The notes beneath the pieces were generated by a model. That model was not told the origin of the DNA, searched no databases, and worked only from the letters and a program-made list of their open reading frames with translations. A program made the translations under genes and the position numbers. Shown piece by piece: positions 10,426 through 63,690 of a stretch of 64,000 nucleotides of DNA. The DNA lies in the IMG/VR virus record IMGVR_UViG_3300034072_000926, positions 401,260 through 465,259 of that record; one strand, written 5' to 3'. Position 1 is the first letter of the stretch, and each line of letters starts with the position of its first letter.

Positions 10426-10794
10426 TTATTGCTTCAAATCAACAGGAGTTATTTCCTTTGGAGCATCCGGACGAGTCTCGCCGATGCTCTTCAGCTTTTC
10501 GTCCTGTTCTTTCTGTAGTTCTGCCTCTCGTTGCGCAGCATTCATGTCCATCAGGTCATTGCATTCGCCCCTCGTGAACACGCCATCGGCTTTAGATTTC
10601 AGAATGAAGATCCTGAAATTGGGATGGGTTTCATAGAAGGACTCGAACAGACTGTAGCAGGAATCTGAGGCACGTTCGTTGTCACGATGGTGGTTCATGT
10701 AATAGGGAAAGCCTACCCCAAAACCCACTATCACTGCACAACATGAAGCGAACAGTAAAGCTGATGATCGATTAGACAATCTCTTCCTCCTCAA
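10426..10794 (-). CDS. membrane-anchored hypothetical protein
   Basis: N-terminal hydrophobic segment LLFASCCAVIVGFGVGFPYY. Confidence 0.6.
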   Translation of the reverse strand: MRRKRLSNRSSALLFASCCAVIVGFGVGFPYYMNHHRDNERASDSCYSLFESFYETHPNFRIFILKSKADGVFTRGECNDLMDMNAAQREAELQKEQDEKLKSIGETRPDAPKEITPVDLKQ

Positions 10795-12409
10795 TCAACA
10801 CGCCTGCTCGAATCCTCAAAATGTTGATGCAGTTCTCAAGACCATACGCCTCAATGAATGCACCGAACCGAGGACCATCACTGGATCCCAACAGGCACTC
10901 GTATAGCGCCTGGAACCAAGAACGCAAAGGTTCAAATCCATGTGCCTTGCCAACCTCATATACCTGATACTGGTAATGATCAGCCGTCATGTTGGGCAGC
11001 ATTGCCTCAAGGCGAGTAGCAAGGTCGATGAACGCATCAGCTTCCTGAACCGTTGGTTCCCGACATTCACGATCATACAGACCACGCTCAGTCGCGTAGC
11101 GGATGACCTTGTTGGCCTTGATGAGAACCTGCAACCGCTGCTGGAAGTCAAGTGGTCGAGACTGTTCGAGGTAGCTGACCAGCGTTTCAGCGTCCGAAGC
11201 CTGGCTGACCACGCTCAAGTTGAGCAATAGGCTATACGCCACATCGACGATCGGTTCGGCGATCCCATTCTCAGTGAAGAACCACGCAGCATCGTTCGGA
11301 GTGAGCGGTCGCCCAAGCATCTTCAGATAGTCGTCTTCCATCTTGGGAACAAGATCGATATGAATCGGCTTAGATGCAGTCGGCTTCTGGAACAGGAAGA
11401 GCATGAGCGATTCCTTAGAGCCATAGGACAACCAGTCCTCAATCGAAAAGCCATTGCCCTTCGACTTGCTGATCTTCTTGCCCTCTGCGTCGAGGAAGAG
11501 TTCATAGGTCATGCCAACTGGAGGTGTCCCGCCGATTGCACGACAGATCTTCCGAGAAGCCGTAACCGAATCAATGAGATCCTTGCCGGACATTTCGTAG
11601 TCCACATCAAAGTGAGCCCAGCGCATTGCCCAGTCCACCTTCCACTGAAGCTTGGAGCGACCATTACCCGTTGGGCTCGTCACCGCCGTGACATCATCCC
11701 TTCCGGTTTCCCACGTGAGCTGGCGCCCGGGGATCACCATTTCGCGCGAGACACCCTCATTGAGGAGTCGTCCCTCAAAAAGCGGCATGAATGGACTGTA
11801 GGTTGCGCGGCGCTCCTCACCCAGTGTGGGCAGCATCACGCCCTGAATGGCATCGTAATTGTCCCAGATGCGATCCAGCATTTCGTTGAACTTGCCCGAC
11901 CGGTAATAGTCAGAGGAGCTCACGAAGGATACGCGACTCCGATCCGGCGAGCTGCCGACCACCGAGCCATCGTAGGTCTTGAGAATGTCGTCAACAAACC
12001 GCACCAGACGATCGTTGTTAGCGCCCGCAAAGCTGCCTGCATACTGGTCGGCATCGTTGGCCACGCACTCGTCCATTTCCGGATAAGGATTTGGAACCGT
12101 GCTCAGCGGCTTGCCCAGATAATCCTGCATCCACGCGGGCATCCCATCAGGAACCTTCCGCATCGCGTCGTAGTCGTCGCTGAACATGATAAGTCGAGTC
12201 TGATACGCCTTGTCAGTCAGCGTATCAAATGCCTTCATAACCCAAAGGGTGCGAACAACTTCTGCGAACGTGCCGATATGCGGCGCACCCGAGGGACCAT
12301 AGCCGGTCTCGAACGTCACGACATCACCAGGCTTCTTCCCCTTCTTCTCAATATGCTTGAGAAGTGAACGGGCCTCTTGGAAGGGCCAGCTCTTTGCCTG
12401 AGTAGTCAC
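10772..12409 (-). CDS. lysS: lysine--tRNA ligase, class I
   Basis: ETGYGPSGAPHIGT (HIGH), KLQWKVDWAMRW, YEMSGKD, KISKSKGN (KMSKS), GPRFG; GTG start after AGGAGG. Confidence 0.95.
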   Translation of the reverse strand: MTTQAKSWPFQEARSLLKHIEKKGKKPGDVVTFETGYGPSGAPHIGTFAEVVRTLWVMKAFDTLTDKAYQTRLIMFSDDYDAMRKVPDGMPAWMQDYLGKPLSTVPNPYPEMDECVANDADQYAGSFAGANNDRLVRFVDDILKTYDGSVVGSSPDRSRVSFVSSSDYYRSGKFNEMLDRIWDNYDAIQGVMLPTLGEERRATYSPFMPLFEGRLLNEGVSREMVIPGRQLTWETGRDDVTAVTSPTGNGRSKLQWKVDWAMRWAHFDVDYEMSGKDLIDSVTASRKICRAIGGTPPVGMTYELFLDAEGKKISKSKGNGFSIEDWLSYGSKESLMLFLFQKPTASKPIHIDLVPKMEDDYLKMLGRPLTPNDAAWFFTENGIAEPIVDVAYSLLLNLSVVSQASDAETLVSYLEQSRPLDFQQRLQVLIKANKVIRYATERGLYDRECREPTVQEADAFIDLATRLEAMLPNMTADHYQYQVYEVGKAHGFEPLRSWFQALYECLLGSSDGPRFGAFIEAYGLENCINILRIRAGVLIEEEEIV

Positions 12410-12481
12410 GTATGCCTCCTTGAATACTATCAAGCTGCAACGTATAGACAATCACACAGGTGTCAACCTATTTAGGAGGAC

Positions 12482-47865: not shown

Positions 47866-49143
47866 TCAGTCCAACTCGCTCAGAAGGAATTTGTTCTCGA
47901 GATAGGGACGAAGCACCTCAGGGATACGTATCTCTCCGCCGTCCTGATAGTTCTCGAGCACCGCCACAAGTGTTCGACCAACAGCTAGACCACTACCGTT
48001 GAGGGTATGTGCGAAGACCGTGTGGCCATCAACCTTGTAGCGGGTATTCATGCGACGTGCTTGGAAATCGCCGCAGTTAGAGACGCTGCTGATCTCTCGA
48101 TACGCTTGCTGACCCGGAAGCCAGACCTCAATATCATAGGTCTTCTGTGCGCTGAAACCCATATCGCCCTTACAGAGCAACATCGTGCGATAAGGAAGAT
48201 CAAGACGAGCAAGGATCTGTTCAGCAGCATTCAGCATATAGTCATGCTCGCTGACACTTTGTTCGGGCTTGCAAATCGAAACCAATTCAACTTTCTGGAA
48301 CTGGTGTTGACGAATCAGCCCACGAGTATCACGACCTGCCGAGCCTGCCTCACTACGGAAGCAATCAGTCAATGCCACATAGCGATGCATCCCTAGCAGG
48401 ATTTCATCAGCATGGATATTGGTCAGGCTGACCTCGGCAGTGGGAATGAGATATTGTTCGGTTGCAAAGGCATCTTCGCTATTGGCAATTCCGAAGAGAT
48501 CATCTTTGAACTTGGGAAGCTGCCCAGTGCCGAATAGTGCTTCCTTGTTGACGATCACTGGAGGGATGACCTCGAGGAAGCCCCGCTCACGATGACTATC
48601 AAGCATGAACTGACCGAGGGCACGATGGAGACGAGCGACTGGACCCATCAACATGCTGAAGCGGGATCCGCTGATCTTCGCAGCACGGTCCATACCGAAT
48701 TGCAGGTCAAGTTCGTAATGAGGAACGGAGTTCTTGGGAAGGATGACGCCCCATTTGCGAACTTCTACATTGCTTGATTCGTTCGAGCCATCGGGAACAT
48801 CATCAGCCGCGATATTGGGACACTGTAGGAGATAGCCGTTGAGAACAAACTCACTGCTATTGGCCTGGTGCTCATATAGCTTGATATCGTCCTTCAGTTT
48901 CGCGATAATCGCTTTTAGCTCATCGACTTTCTCAAGGTCATTAGACTTCATAGCCAGACCAATATCCCCGCTGAGCTTTTTCAGAGCGGACTGCGCCTGC
49001 TGTTGCTTGGAAAGGAAGCCTCGACGATTCTCGTCATATTCGAGAATCTTATCCGTTTTTGGATCATGGCCTCGACTCTTCATAGCGTCAGTGAAGGCCT
49101 GTGGATTGTCCCTGATGGACTTGATATCGAAGTGATAATTCAT
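47866..49143 (-). CDS. serS: serine--tRNA ligase
   Basis: N-terminal coiled coil, LIPTAEV, FRSEAGSAGRDTRGLIRQHQFQKVE, EISSVSNC, TLNGSGLAVGRT. Confidence 0.96.
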   Translation of the reverse strand: MNYHFDIKSIRDNPQAFTDAMKSRGHDPKTDKILEYDENRRGFLSKQQQAQSALKKLSGDIGLAMKSNDLEKVDELKAIIAKLKDDIKLYEHQANSSEFVLNGYLLQCPNIAADDVPDGSNESSNVEVRKWGVILPKNSVPHYELDLQFGMDRAAKISGSRFSMLMGPVARLHRALGQFMLDSHRERGFLEVIPPVIVNKEALFGTGQLPKFKDDLFGIANSEDAFATEQYLIPTAEVSLTNIHADEILLGMHRYVALTDCFRSEAGSAGRDTRGLIRQHQFQKVELVSICKPEQSVSEHDYMLNAAEQILARLDLPYRTMLLCKGDMGFSAQKTYDIEVWLPGQQAYREISSVSNCGDFQARRMNTRYKVDGHTVFAHTLNGSGLAVGRTLVAVLENYQDGGEIRIPEVLRPYLENKFLLSELD

Positions 49144-49240
49144 ACCGCTTCGTAACATTGGTTACACTAGGCGTCAAGACTAGATTGGGTAGTCATGGTG
49201 AAACCCAGTTCGTTTCCGAACCGGGCCTCATGTATTTAGA

Positions 49241-54913: not shown

Positions 54914-55585
54914 TTACTTTATGGATCTGCCTAATGACCAACCATTGGATAGAAGATCAACTACATCAGATCCTTTTACTTTCTTCGGTCCTTCTTCAGG
55001 ATGACACATCCATTTTGAGCCGAATTGGGAATTACCAGAACCTGTTTGATGCTTTGAAGTATTGGCTCCGATTTTCTTCTTAGCCTCATCAGTATGTTCT
55101 AGACCAGTGAAAGTGCCTTTACGACCCTTAGTAACAGTCAATGCCTTTTGGCTCATTTTCAAAAGCTGGGTGCGAATCTCTGCATCGAACTCCGGATCTT
55201 CCTTACGACGTTCTGTCTGTAGTTGGTTCTTTTTGCGAGCGCCTGCAGGACAAGCAACAGCACGATTTCGGGCACGAACTTCGGGATTGTCGTTTATATA
55301 TTTGAAACCGTTTCCGCCCCAACCACCCGGTATTAGATTGTAACAGTTGTCAGACTTTAGCAGATCTTCTGTTATAAGTTCTCGCTCTTTCAAACGCATT
55401 TCATGTTCATCTTTACAATAGAACAGAATTTCCCGTTTGAAATTTTCTCGTCCATGTTTAGCGATTGCTTGACCTAAAAGTTTCCCAGATCCGAGATAAC
55501 CGTCGTCAATCTTTAATGTTTGATGCATCCCGATATAGAATTTTCCATTTAGGATGTTAGTCGTTTTGTAGATTATATAGAACAC
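54914..55585 (-). CDS. GIY-YIG homing endonuclease with NUMOD3-like motif
   Basis: IIYKTTNILNGKFYIG..YLGSG..FKREIL; HTDEAKKKIG; AT-rich. Confidence 0.9.
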   Translation of the reverse strand: MFYIIYKTTNILNGKFYIGMHQTLKIDDGYLGSGKLLGQAIAKHGRENFKREILFYCKDEHEMRLKERELITEDLLKSDNCYNLIPGGWGGNGFKYINDNPEVRARNRAVACPAGARKKNQLQTERRKEDPEFDAEIRTQLLKMSQKALTVTKGRKGTFTGLEHTDEAKKKIGANTSKHQTGSGNSQFGSKWMCHPEEGPKKVKGSDVVDLLSNGWSLGRSIK

Positions 55586-57654: not shown

Positions 57655-57658
57655 TTTG

Positions 57659-57737
57659 TCCTAGATGTAGGAATCGAACCTACTCGTCTTTCGAAACCCG
57701 TTATGAGCGGGCAGGCTCCCCATTCGCCTTATCTAGG
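57659..57737 (-). tRNA. tRNA with CAU anticodon and long variable arm
   Basis: CCTAGAT/ATCTAGG, GCCCG-CT CAT AA-CGGGT, 12-nt variable region, GTAGG-TTCGATT-CCTAC; A8; no CCA. Confidence 0.7.
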
Positions 57738-57742
57738 ATGTT

Positions 57743-57879
57743 GTGACGGGCAAGTAATCGCTAATGGAATTTAGCCGGCTGCTCTAACCACCTGAGCTAC
57801 ACCGGGCCCTAAGACCCGATGAAGGGAGTCGAACCCTCGACACGCTGGTTGGGATAACCCATCAACTACGGCCCGTCAC
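57743..57879 (-). ncRNA. Y RNA-like element enclosing a circularly permuted tRNA (AT-CCC-AA loop, U73)
   Basis: GTGACGGGCCG..GGGTTATC / T-arm / acceptor closed by TTAG / D-arm / CTTGCCCGTCAC. Confidence 0.8.
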
Positions 57880-57937
57880 GTGTTCTTGATATGGTAAAAG
57901 GGCACTGTTGTCAAGCGCCCTTTTACCATAATGATTA

Positions 57938-60863: not shown

Positions 60864-60953
60864 CGGGAAGCAGTGGAATTGAACCACTCACCTGTAGGGG
60901 TTATAGGTGCTCATAGCTTGAAGCCAGACTAGGACCATCCTAGCTTACTTCCC
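60864..60953 (-). tRNA. tRNA-Sec-like / allo-tRNA-like RNA, anticodon UCA
   Basis: GGGAAGT(A)/(T)GCTTCCC, 6-bp D-stem GCTAGG/CCTAGT with 5-nt loop, CT-TCA-AG, long variable arm CACCT/AGGTG, G73; anticodon stem weak. Confidence 0.7.
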
Positions 60954-61154
60954 AGGTTGCAAGCGATCATAGAACGTCCTCAAGAGATCGTTCGACATCT
61001 TTGCATAATAAGAACGCGGATAGTTGGTTGCAATGTGGTTGAGCTGATTACTCAGCATCTTTGCATCATCGGCTGAGATTTGACGATCATTGATCCAATC
61101 GCTTCCGTTGTGGTTGCGAAGCCAATAATTCTTATTCAATTCCCAAAGACGCAT
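60945..61154 (-). CDS. small protein starting MRLWEL after a TAAATA motif
   Basis: GGAGG SD; its stop codon overlaps the 5' end of the UCA tRNA. Confidence 0.6.
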   Translation of the reverse strand: MRLWELNKNYWLRNHNGSDWINDRQISADDAKMLSNQLNHIATNYPRSYYAKMSNDLLRTFYDRLQPGK

Positions 61155-61177
61155 AATATCCTCCACGTTCAGGATAT

Positions 61178-61453
61178 TTAGCGTTCTGGGCGATGCTCAA
61201 CTGTCCAACCAGGAAGCTCTCTTTGTAGCCTCTTGTGAAGGTTTGCGCCTTGTTTGTTGAATCCCTTGAGATCAAAGGGACGTTTGCGGTCCTCGACGTC
61301 TAGGTAGAATTCACTCTGTTCATACCAAAGCGTCCACTTATAGATATCATCGAAGAGTCGCTGACTGATGGGGAGTTCCTCGAGGTCCATCATGCTACCG
61401 TCTTTACTCCAAACACCACTGCTGGAATAATCGGCCATCAACTTAACGAACAT
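61178..61453 (-). CDS. hypothetical protein
   Basis: start MFVKLMADY after AAGGAG; the upstream ORF-track extension runs through an RNA gene. Confidence 0.65.
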   Translation of the reverse strand: MFVKLMADYSSSGVWSKDGSMMDLEELPISQRLFDDIYKWTLWYEQSEFYLDVEDRKRPFDLKGFNKQGANLHKRLQRELPGWTVEHRPER

Positions 61454-61462
61454 TGGAACTCC

Positions 61463-61706
61463 TTTTGAGGGCAAGTTTTGTGCTGGCCTTTCTTCCGCTG
61501 CGTCTGCCAATTCCGCCACCTCGCCCATCAACTGCCTTGGATACAACAGCAATTATGATCTTGCGTATCCATTCTTGTCTTACTGTCCTAGGCGGATTTT
61601 AGCCGGAGACCTAGTCCAAGACAGATGGTGGGGAGGGAAGGACTCGAACCTTCATGACTTTAGTCCACGGTCTTACATCGATAACCCAGAACTTCGGCCC
61701 TCAAAA
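61463..61706 (-). ncRNA. Y RNA-like element enclosing a permuted tRNA-Tyr-like domain (GTA, long variable arm, A73-CCA)
   Basis: TTTTGAGGGCCGAAG..GGGTTATC, 3' half ending CCTCCCC-A-CCA, ~95-nt linker, 5' half GGCGAGG-TG-GCG..CGC, CTTGCCCTCAAAA. Confidence 0.78.
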
Positions 61707-61715
61707 CGATCTAAA

Positions 61716-61858
61716 AGTTCGACGGGCAAGTGTTGCGAAGGACCTTTTTCAGCGTCCTATCCACTAGACGATCCCCGCACAATGGAGCGGGGACTGGGAT
61801 TCGAACCCAGGTTTCCGGCTTGACATGCGATAACCCTTTGCTATCGGCCCGTCGAACT
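61716..61858 (-). ncRNA. Y RNA-like element enclosing a permuted tRNA (AT-GTC-AA loop, Gly-like acceptor, CCA)
   Basis: AGTTCGACGGGCCGA..GGGTTATC, T-arm CTGGG/CCCAG, TCCCCGC-T-CCA-TTGT-GCGGGGA, D-arm, CTTGCCCGTCGAACT. Confidence 0.82.
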
Positions 61859-61894
61859 AATGACTTTATACACTGGCATCTAACCAGTGTCAAG

Positions 61895-61963
61895 TGCTCT
61901 AGGAGGGATTCGAACCCACAAGAGTCGCTTTAGGAGAGCAACGTCCGTCCAGTCGGCTAGAGC
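61895..61963 (-). tRNA. tRNA-Arg(CCU)-like with shortened D region
   Basis: GCTCTAG/CTAGAGC, TTGCT-CT CCT AA-AGCGA; only 15 nt between acceptor and anticodon stems. Confidence 0.6.
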
Positions 61964-61974
61964 ATAAGTAGAAT

Positions 61975-62283
61975 ATGTTTAGATATCTTCAACCCGGTGA
62001 AAAGGGCGACTATTGGGGAACCTCAAGTCTCCTTGAATGGCTTACAAAGCTTCTAAAAGGTCATGTTGTTCCGGAAGATGCAACTGTTCAGCACATTGAA
62101 TTCTTTCTTCAAGAATATTATGCCAATGCACAGAAAACAGGCCCATATGCTATAATCACTTTCTATCCTTCATCTATCCGATATTTGGGTCCTGAAGGAG
62201 TAGACGGGACTACCTTTGATGCTCATCGAATCAATATCAATTACGATACTAATCGAGTTATTCAAAGTATTAGCTTAGGGTAA
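61975..62283 (+). CDS. hypothetical protein
   Basis: AT-rich 102-aa ORF antisense within the tRNA island; C-terminus resembles small protease-inhibitor motifs (RININYD..VIQSISLG). Confidence 0.6.
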   Translation: MFRYLQPGEKGDYWGTSSLLEWLTKLLKGHVVPEDATVQHIEFFLQEYYANAQKTGPYAIITFYPSSIRYLGPEGVDGTTFDAHRININYDTNRVIQSISLG

Positions 62284-62284
62284 G

Positions 62285-62356
62285 TGGTCCTACCAAGATT
62301 CGAACTTGGGCTTACGCTTTCGTAGAGCGTCGTGATATCCATTTCACTATAGGACC
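62285..62356 (-). tRNA. tRNA-Arg(ACG)
   Basis: GGTCCTA/TAGGACC, GTGA/TCAC D-stem, ACGCT-CT ACG AA-AGCGT. Confidence 0.88.
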
Positions 62357-62361
62357 ATGGG

Positions 62362-62466
62362 TGACGAGCAAGTGGAGGATTCCGTGCGCTCCCAATTGAG
62401 CTAACCGTTGTTCGTGAACAACGATTGGAGTCGAACCAATGATAACGGAAGCCAATCGGCTCGTCA
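62362..62466 (-). ncRNA. YrlA-type Y RNA (T-arm, closed acceptor-like stem, D-arm, no anticodon)
   Basis: TGACGAGCCGA..CGTTATC-ATTGG-TTCGACT-CCAAT-CGTTGTT-CACG-AACAACG..GCTC/GAGC..CTTGCTCGTCA; compensatory change in the terminal stem. Confidence 0.82.
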
Positions 62467-62472
62467 TTTGTT

Positions 62473-62633
62473 TGAACCCCGAGGCCAGTTTCCGCACCTG
62501 GCTCCTTTCATCTCCGTCCATCTTCTCAAGATGGTGAGCTCGCCCAACAAACTTCAAAGATACTCGATTGGGGCGAAGGCCATCGATTGCCTAGCCTGAT
62601 CCGCTCTTTTTCTGAGAAGCTTCAAGGGGTTCA
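62473..62633 (-). ncRNA. candidate structured RNA within the tRNA island
   Basis: closed by TGAACCCC/GGGGTTCA; internal hairpins CCATCTT/AAGATGG, GCCAG/CTGGC, CGCCC/GGGCG. Confidence 0.45.
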
Positions 62634-62634
62634 G

Positions 62635-62705
62635 TGCTCTGAGAGAGAATCGAACTCTCGTTGGCGGGTTACGAATCCGCTATCTTACCACTAAATGACC
62701 AGAGC
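62635..62705 (-). tRNA. tRNA-Thr(CGU)
   Basis: GCTCTGG/TCAGAGC, TT-CGT-AA loop, GAGAG-TTCGATT-CTCTC. Confidence 0.78.
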
Positions 62706-62710
62706 GTGGT

Positions 62711-62784
62711 TGGTGCCGGCTAAGGGAATCGAACCCTTGATTGATGCTTACAAGGCAACTGTTATACCATTTAACTAAGCCGGC
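62711..62784 (-). tRNA. tRNA-Thr(UGU)
   Basis: GCCGGCT/AGCCGGC, GTTA/TAAC, CT-TGT-AA, A73-CCA. Confidence 0.88.
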
Positions 62785-62789
62785 ATTTT

Positions 62790-62923
62790 CCATAGTTTGT
62801 GATCAGACCAGTGACCGCCACGGTTGAGCGTCTGTCTAGCGTCCTTCGTGTAAAAACTCTAGATACTACTGCCTAAGCGGGTAGCCTAATCCGCCCAGAT
62901 TACTCCGAACGAACCAACTATGG
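62790..62923 (-). ncRNA. candidate structured RNA
   Basis: 8-bp terminal inverted repeat CCATAGTT/AACTATGG; ORF-free; lies between tRNAs. Confidence 0.35.
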
Positions 62924-63017
62924 AAGAAACAAAGAGCCTCGCAGCGCATTACTTCTGTAAACTCTTTGTTTCCGATCTGGACTCTACAGCAGTACATCCG
63001 TGCTGTCAAGTCCATAG

Positions 63018-63086
63018 AGGCCCTGTCGAGACTCGAACTCGACATCAGACGTTCGAAGCGTCCGGGCTAGATCCACTAGCAGGGCC
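63018..63086 (-). tRNA. tRNA-Arg(UCG)-like with shortened D region
   Basis: GGCCCTG/CAGGGCC, GGACG-CT TCG AA-CGTCT, TCGAG/CTCGA; 16 nt between acceptor and anticodon stems. Confidence 0.6.
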
Positions 63087-63087
63087 A

Positions 63088-63378
63088 TTAGATCGCCATG
63101 AACATCATCTTGAAGGTCATAGCGTGTTTCTTCTCAAGAAACCAGATCTCTCTGGTCAGAAGCTCTCGGTCGCAAGTCTTATGCCACCAAGTGTCTCCAC
63201 ATTGCCCGATCATGCGTTCGAACCACTGGAGACTCTCAAGCTTCATATACCGATAGCCTTCGCTCCAGTCCTTCATCGACAACCCTCTGTCGAATTTGTC
63301 GAACGGGTCGAACAACTTGTCGGTCTCTTCCCGGCTGAGCTCGAAGACATAGTCTCCGTTCTCTTCATACATGTTCAT
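63088..63378 (-). CDS. hypothetical protein
   Basis: 96-aa ORF ending KHAMTFKMMF. Confidence 0.65.
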   Translation of the reverse strand: MNMYEENGDYVFELSREETDKLFDPFDKFDRGLSMKDWSEGYRYMKLESLQWFERMIGQCGDTWWHKTCDRELLTREIWFLEKKHAMTFKMMFMAI

Positions 63379-63435
63379 GCTTGCCTCCTGTCAACGACAC
63401 GTTAAACTAGAGGCAAGCATGAAGTCAACACCAGG

Positions 63436-63690
63436 TTATTTGTCAGCGATTGCATCAGTGGTCGCGAAACGCAGAAGCGCAGTCGTGATACCAACAACCG
63501 AGAGCAAAGCACCATAATGGTTTCCGATTACATCCTTCAGGAAAGGCATGTAGAGCTCAACAGCACCAAGAATGGTAACTGCGGTCGAGAACCAAACGGT
63601 CTTGGATTTGCCGGCCTTGAGCAACCAGTCCTTAGCGTTAAAGCCTAGGCTCTTTAGTGCGTCAAGTGCGGGAACAACATTGTAGGCCAT
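63436..63690 (-). CDS. small two-TM protein, possible holin
   Basis: KSKTVWF..two TM helices..LRFAT; TAAATA motif and GGAGATCGG leader upstream. Confidence 0.6.
   Translation of the reverse strand: MAYNVVPALDALKSLGFNAKDWLLKAGKSKTVWFSTAVTILGAVELYMPFLKDVIGNHYGALLSVVGITTALLRFATTDAIADK

What the first reader, a model, noticed from the sequence alone, without database searches (positions are those of the whole stretch)
61463..61706. Permuted tRNA-Tyr-like Y RNA with a ~95-nt insert between CCA and G1
Seen: the 3' half has a GTA anticodon, a type II variable arm (GGAC-TAAA-GTC), a T-arm and A73-CCA, a coherent Tyr identity set. The 5' half (GGCGAGG-TG-GCG..CGC-A-GCGG) lies ~95 nt downstream and pairs 6/7 in the acceptor stem. 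The ends pair over 10 bp (TTTTGAGGGC/GCCCTCAAAA). The linker has its own hairpins (CTAGG..CCTAG; GGATAC..GTATCC). The 3' end overlaps the SD of 61178-61453. Inference: linker length is unconstrained, as expected if the linker is excised. The linker may itself be a small RNA, and processing could control translation of the downstream gene.
Basis: partly seen in the sequence, partly recalled or inferred. Interest (0 to 1): 0.8.

Follow-up and report, generated by a model that had tools for sequence, protein, structure and literature searches.

The report
Phage Y RNA with expanded tRNA-like arm
This is one of five Ro60-type "Y RNA" genes in the tRNA island of a 465-kb phage; its tRNA-shaped half is a circularly permuted, leucine-type tRNA whose acceptor stem is closed by an unusually long 100-base insert. 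It is a new variant of a known RNA class, not a new kind of gene.

Summary
On the minus strand, 61463-61706 holds a 10-bp terminal stem and, in this order: the 3' part of an anticodon loop, a long variable arm, a T-arm, the acceptor 3' strand, ACCA, 100 nt, the acceptor 5' strand, and a D-arm.

It is a YrlA-class Y RNA. It carries the Ro60-binding motif GNCGAAG. It has four paralogs in the window and orthologs in two related jumbo-phage contigs. A covariance model built without it finds its relatives just upstream of Ro60 genes. The window's own contig encodes a Ro60 protein.

YrlA RNAs are already described as circularly permuted tRNA mimics, and M. smegmatis YrlA is cut by RNase P and receives CCA.

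The "Tyr identity" is not supported:
- The body is tRNA-Leu-like.
- GTA is lost in one ortholog.
- The same triplet position drifts freely in the sister Y RNA.

The insert is lineage-specific. The orthologs have 9- and 15-nt loops, and 123 relatives have 0-38 nt. It is unique in sequence and moderately structured. Whether it is excised could not be tested.

Verdict: new variant of a known kind, moderate interest.

The parts
61697..61706 (-). P1 5' strand, TTTTGAGGGC (terminal stem, Ro60-binding module)
   Evidence: Sequence. P1 covaries across 123 relatives.
61692..61698 (-). GCCGAAG, an instance of the Ro60-binding motif GNCGAAN0-1G
   Evidence: Sequence. The motif is defined in PMC4201824. 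CCGA is invariant in alignment A2.
61683..61689 (-). P2 5' strand CTGG (61689-61686) followed by the start of the conserved GGTTATC block
   Evidence: CTGG pairs with CCAG at 61486-61483. The paralogs show covarying pairs at this position (AAGGG/TCCTT, GTAAG/CTTAC), read.
61671..61678 (-). Vestigial 3' part of an anticodon loop, A32-U33-GUA-A37-G38-A39; GTA lies at 61676-61674
   Evidence: ARAGORN places GTA at positions 34-36 when the halves are joined. The triplet is not conserved in L079.
61667..61670 (-). P3 3' strand CCGT (anticodon-stem equivalent)
   Evidence: Pairs with GCGG at 61498-61495. The orthologs have CCGC and CTGC, which are one-sided G-U to G-C changes.
61654..61666 (-). Long (class II) variable arm, with stem GAC/GTC and loop TAAA
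   Evidence: ARAGORN drawing. The arm is kept in both orthologs.
61637..61653 (-). T-arm GAAGG-TTCGAGT-CCTTC
   Evidence: Sequence. The L079 ortholog has CCAGG/CCTGG, two compensatory pairs.
61630..61636 (-). Acceptor 3' strand CCTCCCC
   Evidence: Pairs 6 of 7 with 61525-61519. L079 has CTCCCCG/CGGGGAG, pairing 7 of 7 with three double changes.
61626..61629 (-). Encoded discriminator A73 plus CCA
   Evidence: Sequence. ACCA is also present in L079, but L202 has ACTA.
61526..61625 (-). 100-nt lineage-specific insert closing the acceptor stem. It is predicted to form a stem that branches into two hairpins.
   Evidence: blastn against L202 breaks at 61528/61628. The fold has z = -2.05 for the insert alone and z = -3.8 with the acceptor strands. 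No other copy was found anywhere.
61519..61525 (-). Acceptor 5' strand GGCGAGG (G1-G7)
   Evidence: Sequence.
61500..61516 (-). D-arm GCGGAATTGGCAGACGC, of tRNA-Leu type
   Evidence: Among 311 tRNAs it matches only tRNA-Leu genes. A tRNA-Leu(CAG) contig in run X3 also matches it.
61495..61498 (-). P3 5' strand GCGG
   Evidence: Sequence and orthologs.
61483..61486 (-). P2 3' strand CCAG
   Evidence: Sequence.
61463..61472 (-). P1 3' strand GCCCTCAAAA, preceded by the conserved ACTTG
   Evidence: Sequence. ACUUG is conserved in A2 and in the R1 consensus.
61716..61858 (-). Y2, a sister Y RNA 9 nt upstream of Y1 (acceptor loop TCCATTGT). It very likely shares a transcript with Y1.
   Evidence: R1 scores it 121 bits. 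Promoter-like TTGACA-17-TATAAA lies at 61893-61865.
62360..62468 (-). Y3, a Y RNA paralog directly upstream of tRNA-Arg(acg)
   Evidence: Rfam YrlA 30.4 bits, E = 6.7e-4. R1 51 bits.
63730..63797 (-). Y4, a short Y RNA paralog without a tRNA module
   Evidence: R1 32 bits. Sequence.
57742..57880 (-). Y5, a Y RNA paralog
   Evidence: R1 87 bits. Rfam YrlA 33.1 bits.
61178..61464 (-). Downstream ORF (91 aa, no Pfam family) with Shine-Dalgarno AAGGAG at 61464-61459 and ATG at 61453
   Evidence: The same ORF follows the Y1 ortholog in L202.

Best explanation
The element is a phage-encoded Y RNA of the YrlA class.

Anatomy:
- Its 5' and 3' ends pair into a 10-bp stem that carries the GNCGAAG motif. 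This is the docking site for Ro60, and the same 465-kb phage contig encodes a Ro60.
- The rest is a complete class II tRNA of leucine type, circularly permuted. The Ro60 stem is attached where the anticodon loop would be closed, between nt 31 and 32.
- The natural tRNA ends are joined by a loop. In this phage lineage that loop has grown from about 10 nt to 104 nt.
- It is transcribed with its sister Y2, from Y2's promoter, as part of a Y2-Y1-ORF precursor.

Inferred, not shown:
- As in other Ro60 systems, the tRNA-shaped module recruits a tRNA-binding or RNA-processing partner to Ro60.
- The stem has 7 bp, a tRNA-like T-arm and an encoded ACCA. I therefore think RNase P most likely cuts 5' of G1 and the insert is trimmed back to CCA. 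That would leave a two-piece Y RNA held together by the Ro60 stem, as shown for M. smegmatis YrlA. I put this step at about even odds.
- The GTA triplet is a relic of the ancestral anticodon loop, not a working anticodon.
For: The family is a Y RNA family:
- Motif and architecture match published YrlA.
- Covariance model R1 was built from 20 phage relatives without Y1. Of its 24 pairs, 22 show changes on both sides. 96% of cells pair, against 40-45% when partners are slid.
- R1 hits lie within 1.5 kb upstream of Ro60 genes in most of 80 Ro60 loci.
- R1 finds four paralogs in the window. Two of them also give sub-threshold Rfam YrlA hits.

Y1 belongs to it:
- The Y1 orthologs score 88 bits (L079) and 60.8 bits (L202).
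- Outside the loop, Y1 is 92% and 98% identical to the L202 ortholog.
- The window is 100% identical to L075, a piece of IMGVR_UViG_3300034072_000926. That contig encodes a protein with TROVE and vWA_Ro60 domains.
- The relatives Phosso, L202's contig and L026's contig also encode Ro60.

The tRNA module is Leu-like.

The insert is exceptional:
- Acceptor-loop lengths in 123 relatives are 0-38 nt.
- The orthologs have 9 and 15 nt.

Processing is plausible:
- NCCA opens the loop in 16 of 96 relatives, where about 1.5 would be expected by chance.
- M. smegmatis YrlA is cut by RNase P and receives CCA in vivo (PMC4201824; bioRxiv 10.1101/312249).
Against: - Rfam's YrlA model gives no hit on Y1 even at E = 10.
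- R1 scores Y1 at only 26 bits and mis-aligns its 3' half into the insert. Membership therefore rests on the orthologs and on reading the sequence.
- Ro60 is not adjacent. It lies elsewhere on the contig, and no Y RNA sits beside the Ro60 gene in this phage clade.
- Ro60 binding, expression and processing are all untested.
- The L202 ortholog has ACTA instead of ACCA.
- The acceptor strands plus the insert can fold into one long helix in which CCA and nt -1/-2 are paired. That could hinder RNase P.
- One cDNA library holds the D-arm, insert and T-arm words, 12 of 12 sampled. This may be phage DNA.
Confidence: 0.72

Rival explanations
1. It is the same Y RNA, but the insert is never removed. 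The insert is an expansion of the acceptor arm that stays in the mature roughly 244-nt RNA. There it could add a binding surface or simply be tolerated.
For: - YrlA acceptor stems vary in length and are 'much longer' in some cyanobacteria.
- Relatives with 28-38-nt loops form extended hairpins.
- The acceptor strands and insert fold as one nearly continuous helix with two terminal hairpins, z = -3.8.
- Most YrlA RNAs are thought to be poor RNase P substrates.
- Run X9 holds the words of the D-arm, insert and T-arm stretch.
Against: - The exact 7-bp stem followed by ACCA is the configuration that is cut in M. smegmatis.
- A 100-nt insert with no counterpart in the orthologs or in 123 relatives is easier to tolerate if it is discarded.
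- No covariation is available to show that the insert's fold is selected.
Confidence: 0.35
2. It is a genuine permuted or split tRNA gene. After the acceptor is opened, the RNA is aminoacylated. It would be charged with Leu by body identity or Tyr by the GUA triplet. It might even have the Ro stem removed and the anticodon loop sealed by phage RNA-repair enzymes, giving a decoding tRNA.
For: - The joined halves make a complete class II cloverleaf with U33-GUA-A37, which ARAGORN calls tRNA-Tyr(gta).
- It has an encoded ACCA and a 7-bp stem.
- LeuRS does not read the anticodon (my own knowledge).
- The cultured relative Phosso has 62 tRNAs for 19 amino acids but none for Tyr. It also encodes RNA ligases, a polynucleotide kinase and a nucleotidyl transferase.
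- The authors of the YrlA structure raised this possibility.
Against: - GTA is replaced by UGG, with A33, in the L079 ortholog.
- In Y2 orthologs the equivalent triplet drifts: GTC, CTC, TCC, ATC.
- The body is Leu-like while the triplet reads Tyr.
- There is an A31.A39 mismatch.
- No bulge-helix-bulge motif is apparent in the terminal stem, and no bacterial enzyme for that kind of splicing is known.
- P1 and the GNCGAAG motif are shared with a paralog (Y4) that has no tRNA module.
- Phosso has no Y1-type element.
Confidence: 0.07
3. It is a decaying remnant with no function of its own: the halves of two tandem tRNA-Leu genes, or a Y RNA disabled by an insertion.
For: - The 100-nt insert disrupts the usual compact acceptor hairpin.
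- The acceptor has a C.C mismatch.
- There are no expression data.
- Four other Y RNAs in the window could cover the function.
Against: - All helices and the Ro motif are intact.
- Three orthologs keep the helices through compensatory changes.
- The C.C mismatch is shared with L202, which has no insert.
- The element is identical in contigs from three independent studies.
- It sits 9 nt behind a promoter-driven sister RNA and directly before a conserved ORF.
Confidence: 0.08

Closest known systems
YrlA (Y RNA-like A; Rfam RF02553; Salmonella Typhimurium structure PDB 6CU1)
   Same: - Terminal stem with the GNCGAA motif for Ro60.
- Effector module with T-arm, closed acceptor stem and D-arm, in that permuted order.
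- The anticodon-stem equivalent is formed by the two halves of the RNA.
   Different: - The loop closing the acceptor is 104 nt here, against a few nt.
- The acceptor stem has 7 bp, against 6.
- It has an encoded ACCA, a long class II variable arm and a retained 3' half of the anticodon loop.
- The gene sits in a phage tRNA island, far from the Ro60 gene.
- It does not reach the Rfam score.
Mycobacterium smegmatis YrlA (Chen et al. 2014, PMC4201824)
   Same: - Seven-bp acceptor stem.
- That RNA is cut by RNase P at the tRNA 5' site and ends in CCA. The two halves stay bound to Ro60. I infer the same fate here.
   Different: - There CA is added after trimming; here CCA is encoded.
- There the loop is short; here 100 nt would have to be removed.
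- Processing has not been shown here.
Circularly permuted tRNA genes of Cyanidioschyzon merolae and some archaea (Soma et al. 2007, as cited)
   Same: The 3' half lies upstream of the 5' half, a linker joins CCA to G1, and the acceptor is opened by RNase P/Z.
   Different: - Those precursors are circularised at a bulge-helix-bulge motif by the splicing endonuclease and ligase, and they yield decoding tRNAs.
- Here the ends carry a Ro60-binding stem.
- The anticodon triplet is not conserved.
- No such enzyme is known in bacteria or phages.
Two-piece tmRNA from permuted ssrA genes (alpha-proteobacteria, cyanobacteria; my own knowledge)
   Same: The T-arm, acceptor 3' strand and CCA lie upstream of an intervening segment that is excised, followed by the 5' acceptor strand. 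The mature RNA is two base-paired pieces.
   Different: Here there is no tag reading frame and no pseudoknots, ARAGORN calls no tmRNA at this site, and a D-arm and variable arm are present.
Thermus phage phiLo Yrl1/Yrl2 with phage Ro60 (PMC12135203)
   Same: Phage-encoded Ro60 together with phage-encoded Y RNA-like RNAs carrying the CGAA motif. That complex recruits the host PNPase.
   Different: - Those RNAs lie directly upstream of the Ro60 gene and are simple stem-bulge-stem RNAs.
- Here there are five RNAs scattered among tRNA genes, four of them with full tRNA-like modules.

Membership tests
YrlA-class Y RNA | The 5' and 3' ends pair into a stem carrying the Ro60-binding motif GNCGAAN0-1G | tested here: met
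   10-bp P1, with GCCGAAG at 61698-61692. The motif definition comes from PMC4201824.
YrlA-class Y RNA | tRNA-like module in the order T-arm, acceptor-like stem closed by a loop, D-arm, with conserved T- and D-loop nucleotides | tested here: met
   TTCGAGT T-loop, GG in the D-loop and a 7-bp acceptor. The closing loop is atypical at 104 nt, against 0-38 nt in 123 relatives.
YrlA-class Y RNA | Reaches the curated Rfam RF02553 gathering score (69 bits) | tested here: not met
   No hit on Y1 at E up to 10. Paralogs Y3 and Y5 score 30.4 and 33.1 bits. The Rfam model does not reach these phage RNAs. My own model R1 scores the orthologs at 61-88 bits.
YrlA-class Y RNA | A Ro60 (TROVE) protein is encoded in the same genome, usually adjacent | tested here: met
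   A Ro60 with TROVE and vWA_Ro60 domains lies on the same contig (L268). It is not adjacent, and no Y RNA sits next to it.
YrlA-class Y RNA | The RNA is bound by Ro60 in vivo | not testable with these tools
   Needs co-immunoprecipitation or a gel-shift assay.
RNase P-processed two-piece YrlA (M. smegmatis type) | Seven-bp acceptor stem with a tRNA-like T-arm, the determinant of RNase P cleavage | tested here: met
   GGCGAGG/CCTCCCC, 6 of 7 paired, followed by ACCA.
RNase P-processed two-piece YrlA (M. smegmatis type) | Two stable halves, with the 5' half ending in CCA | not testable with these tools
   Only assembled contigs of RNA libraries were available.
Functional circularly permuted tRNA gene | The 3' half lies upstream of the 5' half, and together they form a full cloverleaf | tested here: met
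   ARAGORN calls the in-silico joined halves an 85-nt tRNA.
Functional circularly permuted tRNA gene | The anticodon is conserved among orthologs and consistent with the identity elements of the body | tested here: not met
   GTA in the window and L202, but UGG with A33 in L079. The body is Leu-like.
Functional circularly permuted tRNA gene | A bulge-helix-bulge motif at the joined termini for the splicing endonuclease | tested here: inconclusive
   The termini form a Y RNA stem with the GNCGAAG internal loop. I saw no 3-4-3 bulge-helix-bulge when reading, but I made no formal search.
Two-piece (permuted) tmRNA | Tag-peptide reading frame and pseudoknots after the 5' acceptor strand | tested here: not met
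   ARAGORN and Rfam find no tmRNA at 61463-61706. A D-arm follows the acceptor strand.

The most novel reading that the evidence does not exclude
After RNase P opens the acceptor and the insert is trimmed, the two-piece RNA is a chargeable tRNA-Leu- or tRNA-Tyr-like molecule still clamped by Ro60. This would be a Y RNA that is aminoacylated. Alternatively, it is converted by the phage's RNA-repair enzymes into a decoding tRNA-Tyr, the one isotype that the cultured relative Phosso lacks. Either case would be the first permuted or split tRNA that functions in a bacterial virus.
Probability: 0.06. Interest if true: 0.85.

Novelty: new variant of a known kind. Interest (0 to 1): 0.42.

Why it matters
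- Y RNAs are proposed to have arisen from dimeric tRNA transcripts, with the acceptor stem coming from the spacer between two tRNAs. This element looks like that intermediate. It is a full class II tRNA, permuted, that still carries half an anticodon loop, an encoded CCA and a spacer-sized linker.
- It offers a clean natural test of whether a YrlA acceptor loop is opened by RNase P and whether loop content matters. The 9-, 15- and 104-nt orthologs are otherwise 92-98% identical (window vs L202).
- Jumbo rhizobiophage-like genomes are shown here to carry sets of five or more Y RNAs inside their tRNA islands. Each mimics a different tRNA, and all lie far from the phage Ro60 gene. This points to Ro60/Y RNA complexes as part of the phage's tRNA-centred counter-defence or RNA-repair equipment.

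Tried and rejected
- Rfam at E up to 10 over 61000-64000 gave nothing on Y1: no ribozyme, no intron, no tmRNA.
- Model R1 could not bridge the 100-nt insert and mis-aligned the 3' half. I therefore relied on the orthologs.
- My first script suggested an 88-nt insert in L026 and long inserts in several other loci. Reading them showed short loops closed by G-U-containing stems, or neighbouring tRNAs. These were false alarms.
- A Y1-specific pattern found only three viral contigs. It found nothing related in metagenome contigs and nothing in genome contigs. The comparative depth for Y1 is therefore three sequences.
- The insert has no match in the phage collection, the window or any fetched locus. 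It is not a repeated mobile element in the data available.
- The sigma-70 scan was at chance level (13 found, 9.8 expected). A weak AAGACA-18-CATAAT inside the insert is not credible on its own.
- Generic Ro60 queries did not surface the relevant phages. I had to walk through the whole Phosso record to find its Ro60, then step to L222 and L268.
- The RNA libraries were available only as contigs, at depth about 4, and showed no ends.

Full report
**What is there.** All features lie on the minus strand. Reading 61706 down to 61463 gives, in order:
- TTTTGAGGGC
- CGAAG...GGGTTATCG
- A-T-GTA-A-G-A
- CCGT
- a 13-nt arm, G-GAC-TAAA-GTC-AT
- GAAGG-TTCGAGT-CCTTC
- CCTCCCC
- ACCA
- 100 nt
- GGCGAGG
- TG
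- GCGGAATTGGCAGACGC
- A
- GCGG
- ...CCAG...ACTT
- GCCCTCAAAA

The linker is 100 nt rather than about 95. The overlap with the Shine-Dalgarno site is two A's of AAGGAG (61464-61459). The insert is not an assembly artefact: contigs from three DNA runs in three different studies span the whole element without a single difference.

**It is a Y RNA, and the window holds five of them.**
- The 5' strand carries GCCGAAG, an instance of the Ro60-binding motif GNCGAAN0-1G (PMC4201824).
- The same CCGA...GGTTATC...ACTTGC frame recurs at 61716-61858 (Y2), 62360-62468 (Y3) and 63730-63797 (Y4).
- Rfam gives a sub-threshold YrlA hit on Y3 (30.4 bits, E = 6.7e-4).
- I collected relatives from viral contigs with a pattern scan and aligned 20 of them without Y1.
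- RNAalifold found P1, the T-arm, a 7-bp acceptor stem and the D-arm, with compensatory changes in 20 of 24 pairs.
- On 123 matches of the resulting model R1, 96% of cells pair, against 40-45% when partners are slid. Of 24 pairs, 22 change on both sides.
- R1 hits lie just upstream of the Ro60 gene in most of 80 independently fetched Ro60 loci. This ties the model to Ro60 biology.
- In the window, R1 scores Y2 at 121 bits, a fifth copy at 57742-57880 at 87 bits, Y3 at 51 bits and Y4 at 32 bits.

**Y1 itself.**
- R1 aligns the 5' half of Y1 well but cannot bridge the insert, scoring 26 bits.
- Membership rests on two orthologs found with a Y1-specific pattern. L079:6020-6168 scores 88 bits and L202:2228-2383 scores 60.8 bits.
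- Outside the acceptor loop, Y1 is 71/77 and 62/63 identical to the L202 copy. In L202 the same ORF (MFVKLMADYSS...) follows the element.
- The more distant L079 copy keeps the T-arm and acceptor stem through five double substitutions.

**The phage has its own Ro60.**
- The window is 100% identical over 13,767 nt to L075, a piece of IMGVR_UViG_3300034072_000926, a 465-kb contig.
- No Ro60 lies in the 64-kb window.
- I walked through the nearest cultured relative, Sinorhizobium phage Phosso. That turned up a 'Ro-like RNA binding protein' between its tail sheath and tail tube genes.
- Its homologue in L202's contig then led to a 560-aa protein with TROVE and vWA_Ro60 domains on the window's own contig (L268).
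- In this clade no Y RNA lies beside the Ro60 gene. The Y RNAs sit among the tRNA genes instead.

**How far the 'permuted tRNA-Tyr' reading holds.**
- Published work already describes YrlA RNAs as resembling circularly permuted tRNAs with a closed acceptor stem. It also proposes an origin from dimeric tRNA transcripts (bioRxiv 10.1101/312249).
- Y1 fits this unusually literally. Joining the 5' half (to A31) to the 3' half (from A32) gives an 85-nt class II cloverleaf, which ARAGORN calls tRNA-Tyr(gta).
- The Tyr label does not survive comparison:
  - The nine nearest of about 300 real tRNAs are all tRNA-Leu, scoring 32-22 against 15 for the best Tyr.
  - The acceptor-plus-D-arm half matches only tRNA-Leu genes.
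  - An 83-nt contig in run X3 that reads as tRNA-Leu(CAG) matches both the D-arm (21/22) and the T-arm (20/21).
  - GTA is kept in the close L202 copy but is UGG, preceded by A33, in L079.
  - In the Y2 orthologs the equivalent triplet reads GTC, CTC, TCC or ATC, while U33 and A37-A38 mostly stay.
- I therefore read the triplet as a relic of an anticodon loop, not as an anticodon under selection.

**The insert.**
- blastn between L202 and the window breaks exactly at 61528/61628: 99 nt here against 10 nt there.
- The three orthologous loops are ACCACATGA (9 nt), ACTAGCAAACATATG (15 nt), and ACCA plus 100 nt.
- Among 123 family members the loop is 0-38 nt. The expansion is therefore exceptional and recent.
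- The insert has no other copy in the window, in about 300 fetched loci or in the phage collection.
- It folds into a stem that branches into two hairpins (z = -2.05). Together with the acceptor strands it forms an almost continuous helix (z = -3.8).
- No covariation is available to judge whether that fold matters.

**Mechanism, marked by how well each step is supported.**
- Shown by sequence and comparison: it is a Ro60-type Y RNA with a permuted Leu-like tRNA module, and the phage encodes Ro60.
- Inferred from context:
  - Y2 has a near-consensus TTGACA-17-TATAAA that places the start at the base of its stem.
  - Y1 begins 9 nt after Y2 ends, and the ORF's Shine-Dalgarno site abuts Y1's stem.
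  - So Y2, Y1 and the ORF are probably one transcript that must be cut.
- Inferred by analogy:
  - M. smegmatis YrlA has a 7-bp acceptor stem. It is cut by RNase P, nibbled and given CCA, and both halves stay on Ro60.
  - Y1 has the same 7-bp stem and an encoded ACCA.
  - NCCA opens the loop in 16 of 96 relatives, about ten times more than chance would give.
  - I therefore favour excision of the insert as a 3' trailer, at about even odds.
- Against the excision step: L202 has ACTA, CCA can pair within the extended helix, and there are no RNA end data.
- Function beyond this is extrapolated from other Ro60 systems (PMC12135203, PMC7824862). The candidates are recruiting a tRNA-binding partner or nuclease, RNA repair, or acting as a decoy in tRNA-targeted defence.

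**Verdict.** This is a new variant of a known kind. It is a YrlA-class Y RNA with a class II, near-complete tRNA module and a uniquely long acceptor-loop insert, in a jumbo phage that scatters its Y RNAs through its tRNA island.

Noticed in passing
window 57742-57880 (-): A fifth Y RNA paralog that my first pattern missed, because it has CCGT instead of CCGA. R1 scores it 87 bits and Rfam YrlA 33 bits. It lies directly upstream of tRNA-Met (57658-57737).
   Followed up: partly
window 61865-61893, about 63806-63834, and just upstream of 57880 (all -): Y2, Y4 and Y5 are each preceded by a near-consensus TTGACA-17-TA..AA promoter, placed so that transcription would start at the first base of the terminal stem. 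Y1 and Y3 lack one and look co-transcribed with a neighbour: Y2-Y1, and Y3 with tRNA-Arg.
   Followed up: partly
window 61779-61786 (-), the acceptor loop of Y2: The loop is polymorphic between otherwise near-identical strains. It reads TCCATTGT here, TGCGATCTAT in run X3 and TCCGATCTAT in run X5. The stem flanks are unchanged, so the loop sequence, CCA included, is not constrained in Y2.
   Followed up: partly
Y2 orthologs: window 61716-61858, L202:2396-2535, L001:2994-3133, L026:9124-9263, L079:7500-7643: All keep a vestigial anticodon-loop 3' half in which the triplet drifts (GTC, GTC, CTC, TCC, ATC). Other phage YrlA relatives (for example L154, L084, L070, L109) seem to carry a complete anticodon-like hairpin between GGTTATC and the T-arm. 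That would make them four-arm permuted cloverleaves. I read this by eye from alignment A2.
   Followed up: partly
L268:2001-3680, L219:13301-14965, L263, L221: In this jumbo-phage clade the Ro60 gene lies apart from the Y RNAs. In Phosso it sits among tail sheath and tail tube genes, about 266 kb away. No R1 hit lies near it. In most other viral contigs the Y RNAs sit immediately upstream of Ro60.
   Followed up: yes
Sinorhizobium phage Phosso PV764938.1 (loci L001, L203-L205, L207, L214-L219): ARAGORN finds 62 tRNA genes covering 19 amino acids, plus two CTA 'Pyl'-type suppressor-like tRNAs, but no tRNA-Tyr. The phage also encodes several RNA ligases, a polynucleotide kinase, a nucleotidyl transferase, peptidyl-tRNA hydrolases and aminoacyl-tRNA synthetases.
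   Followed up: partly
window 63831-64000 (-): The 3' part of a tmRNA-like gene (Rfam RF00023 positions 180-374, 18.8 bits, below threshold), cut by the end of the window. Its T-arm and 3' end lie just before the Y4 promoter.
   Followed up: no
window 60865-60953 (-): A weak match to tRNA-Sec or another class II tRNA (36.2 bits, gathering score 47, E = 1.6e-4) that ARAGORN did not call. It lies at the 3' end of ORF 60945-61166.
   Followed up: no
window 40312-40388 (-): A tRNA with a CTA anticodon, labelled 'Pyl' by ARAGORN (Rfam tRNA 62 bits), with an encoded ACCA. It is a likely amber-suppressor tRNA. Phosso has two of the same kind.
   Followed up: no
window 10772-12451 (-), 47866-49158 (-), 54914-55585 (-): A class I lysyl-tRNA synthetase, a seryl-tRNA synthetase and a SegE-like GIY-YIG endonuclease are encoded in the window. 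Only 3 of the 10 tRNA genes encode CCA.
   Followed up: partly
L208 (Ga0208299_1000803), about 2170-2230: A short stretch, AGTTTTGAGCCGAAATGGCGGAATTGGCATACGCAGCGGAAAAG, joins a Y-RNA-like 5' stem and CCGAA motif directly to a Leu-type D-arm. It may be a truncated or differently built relative.
   Followed up: no
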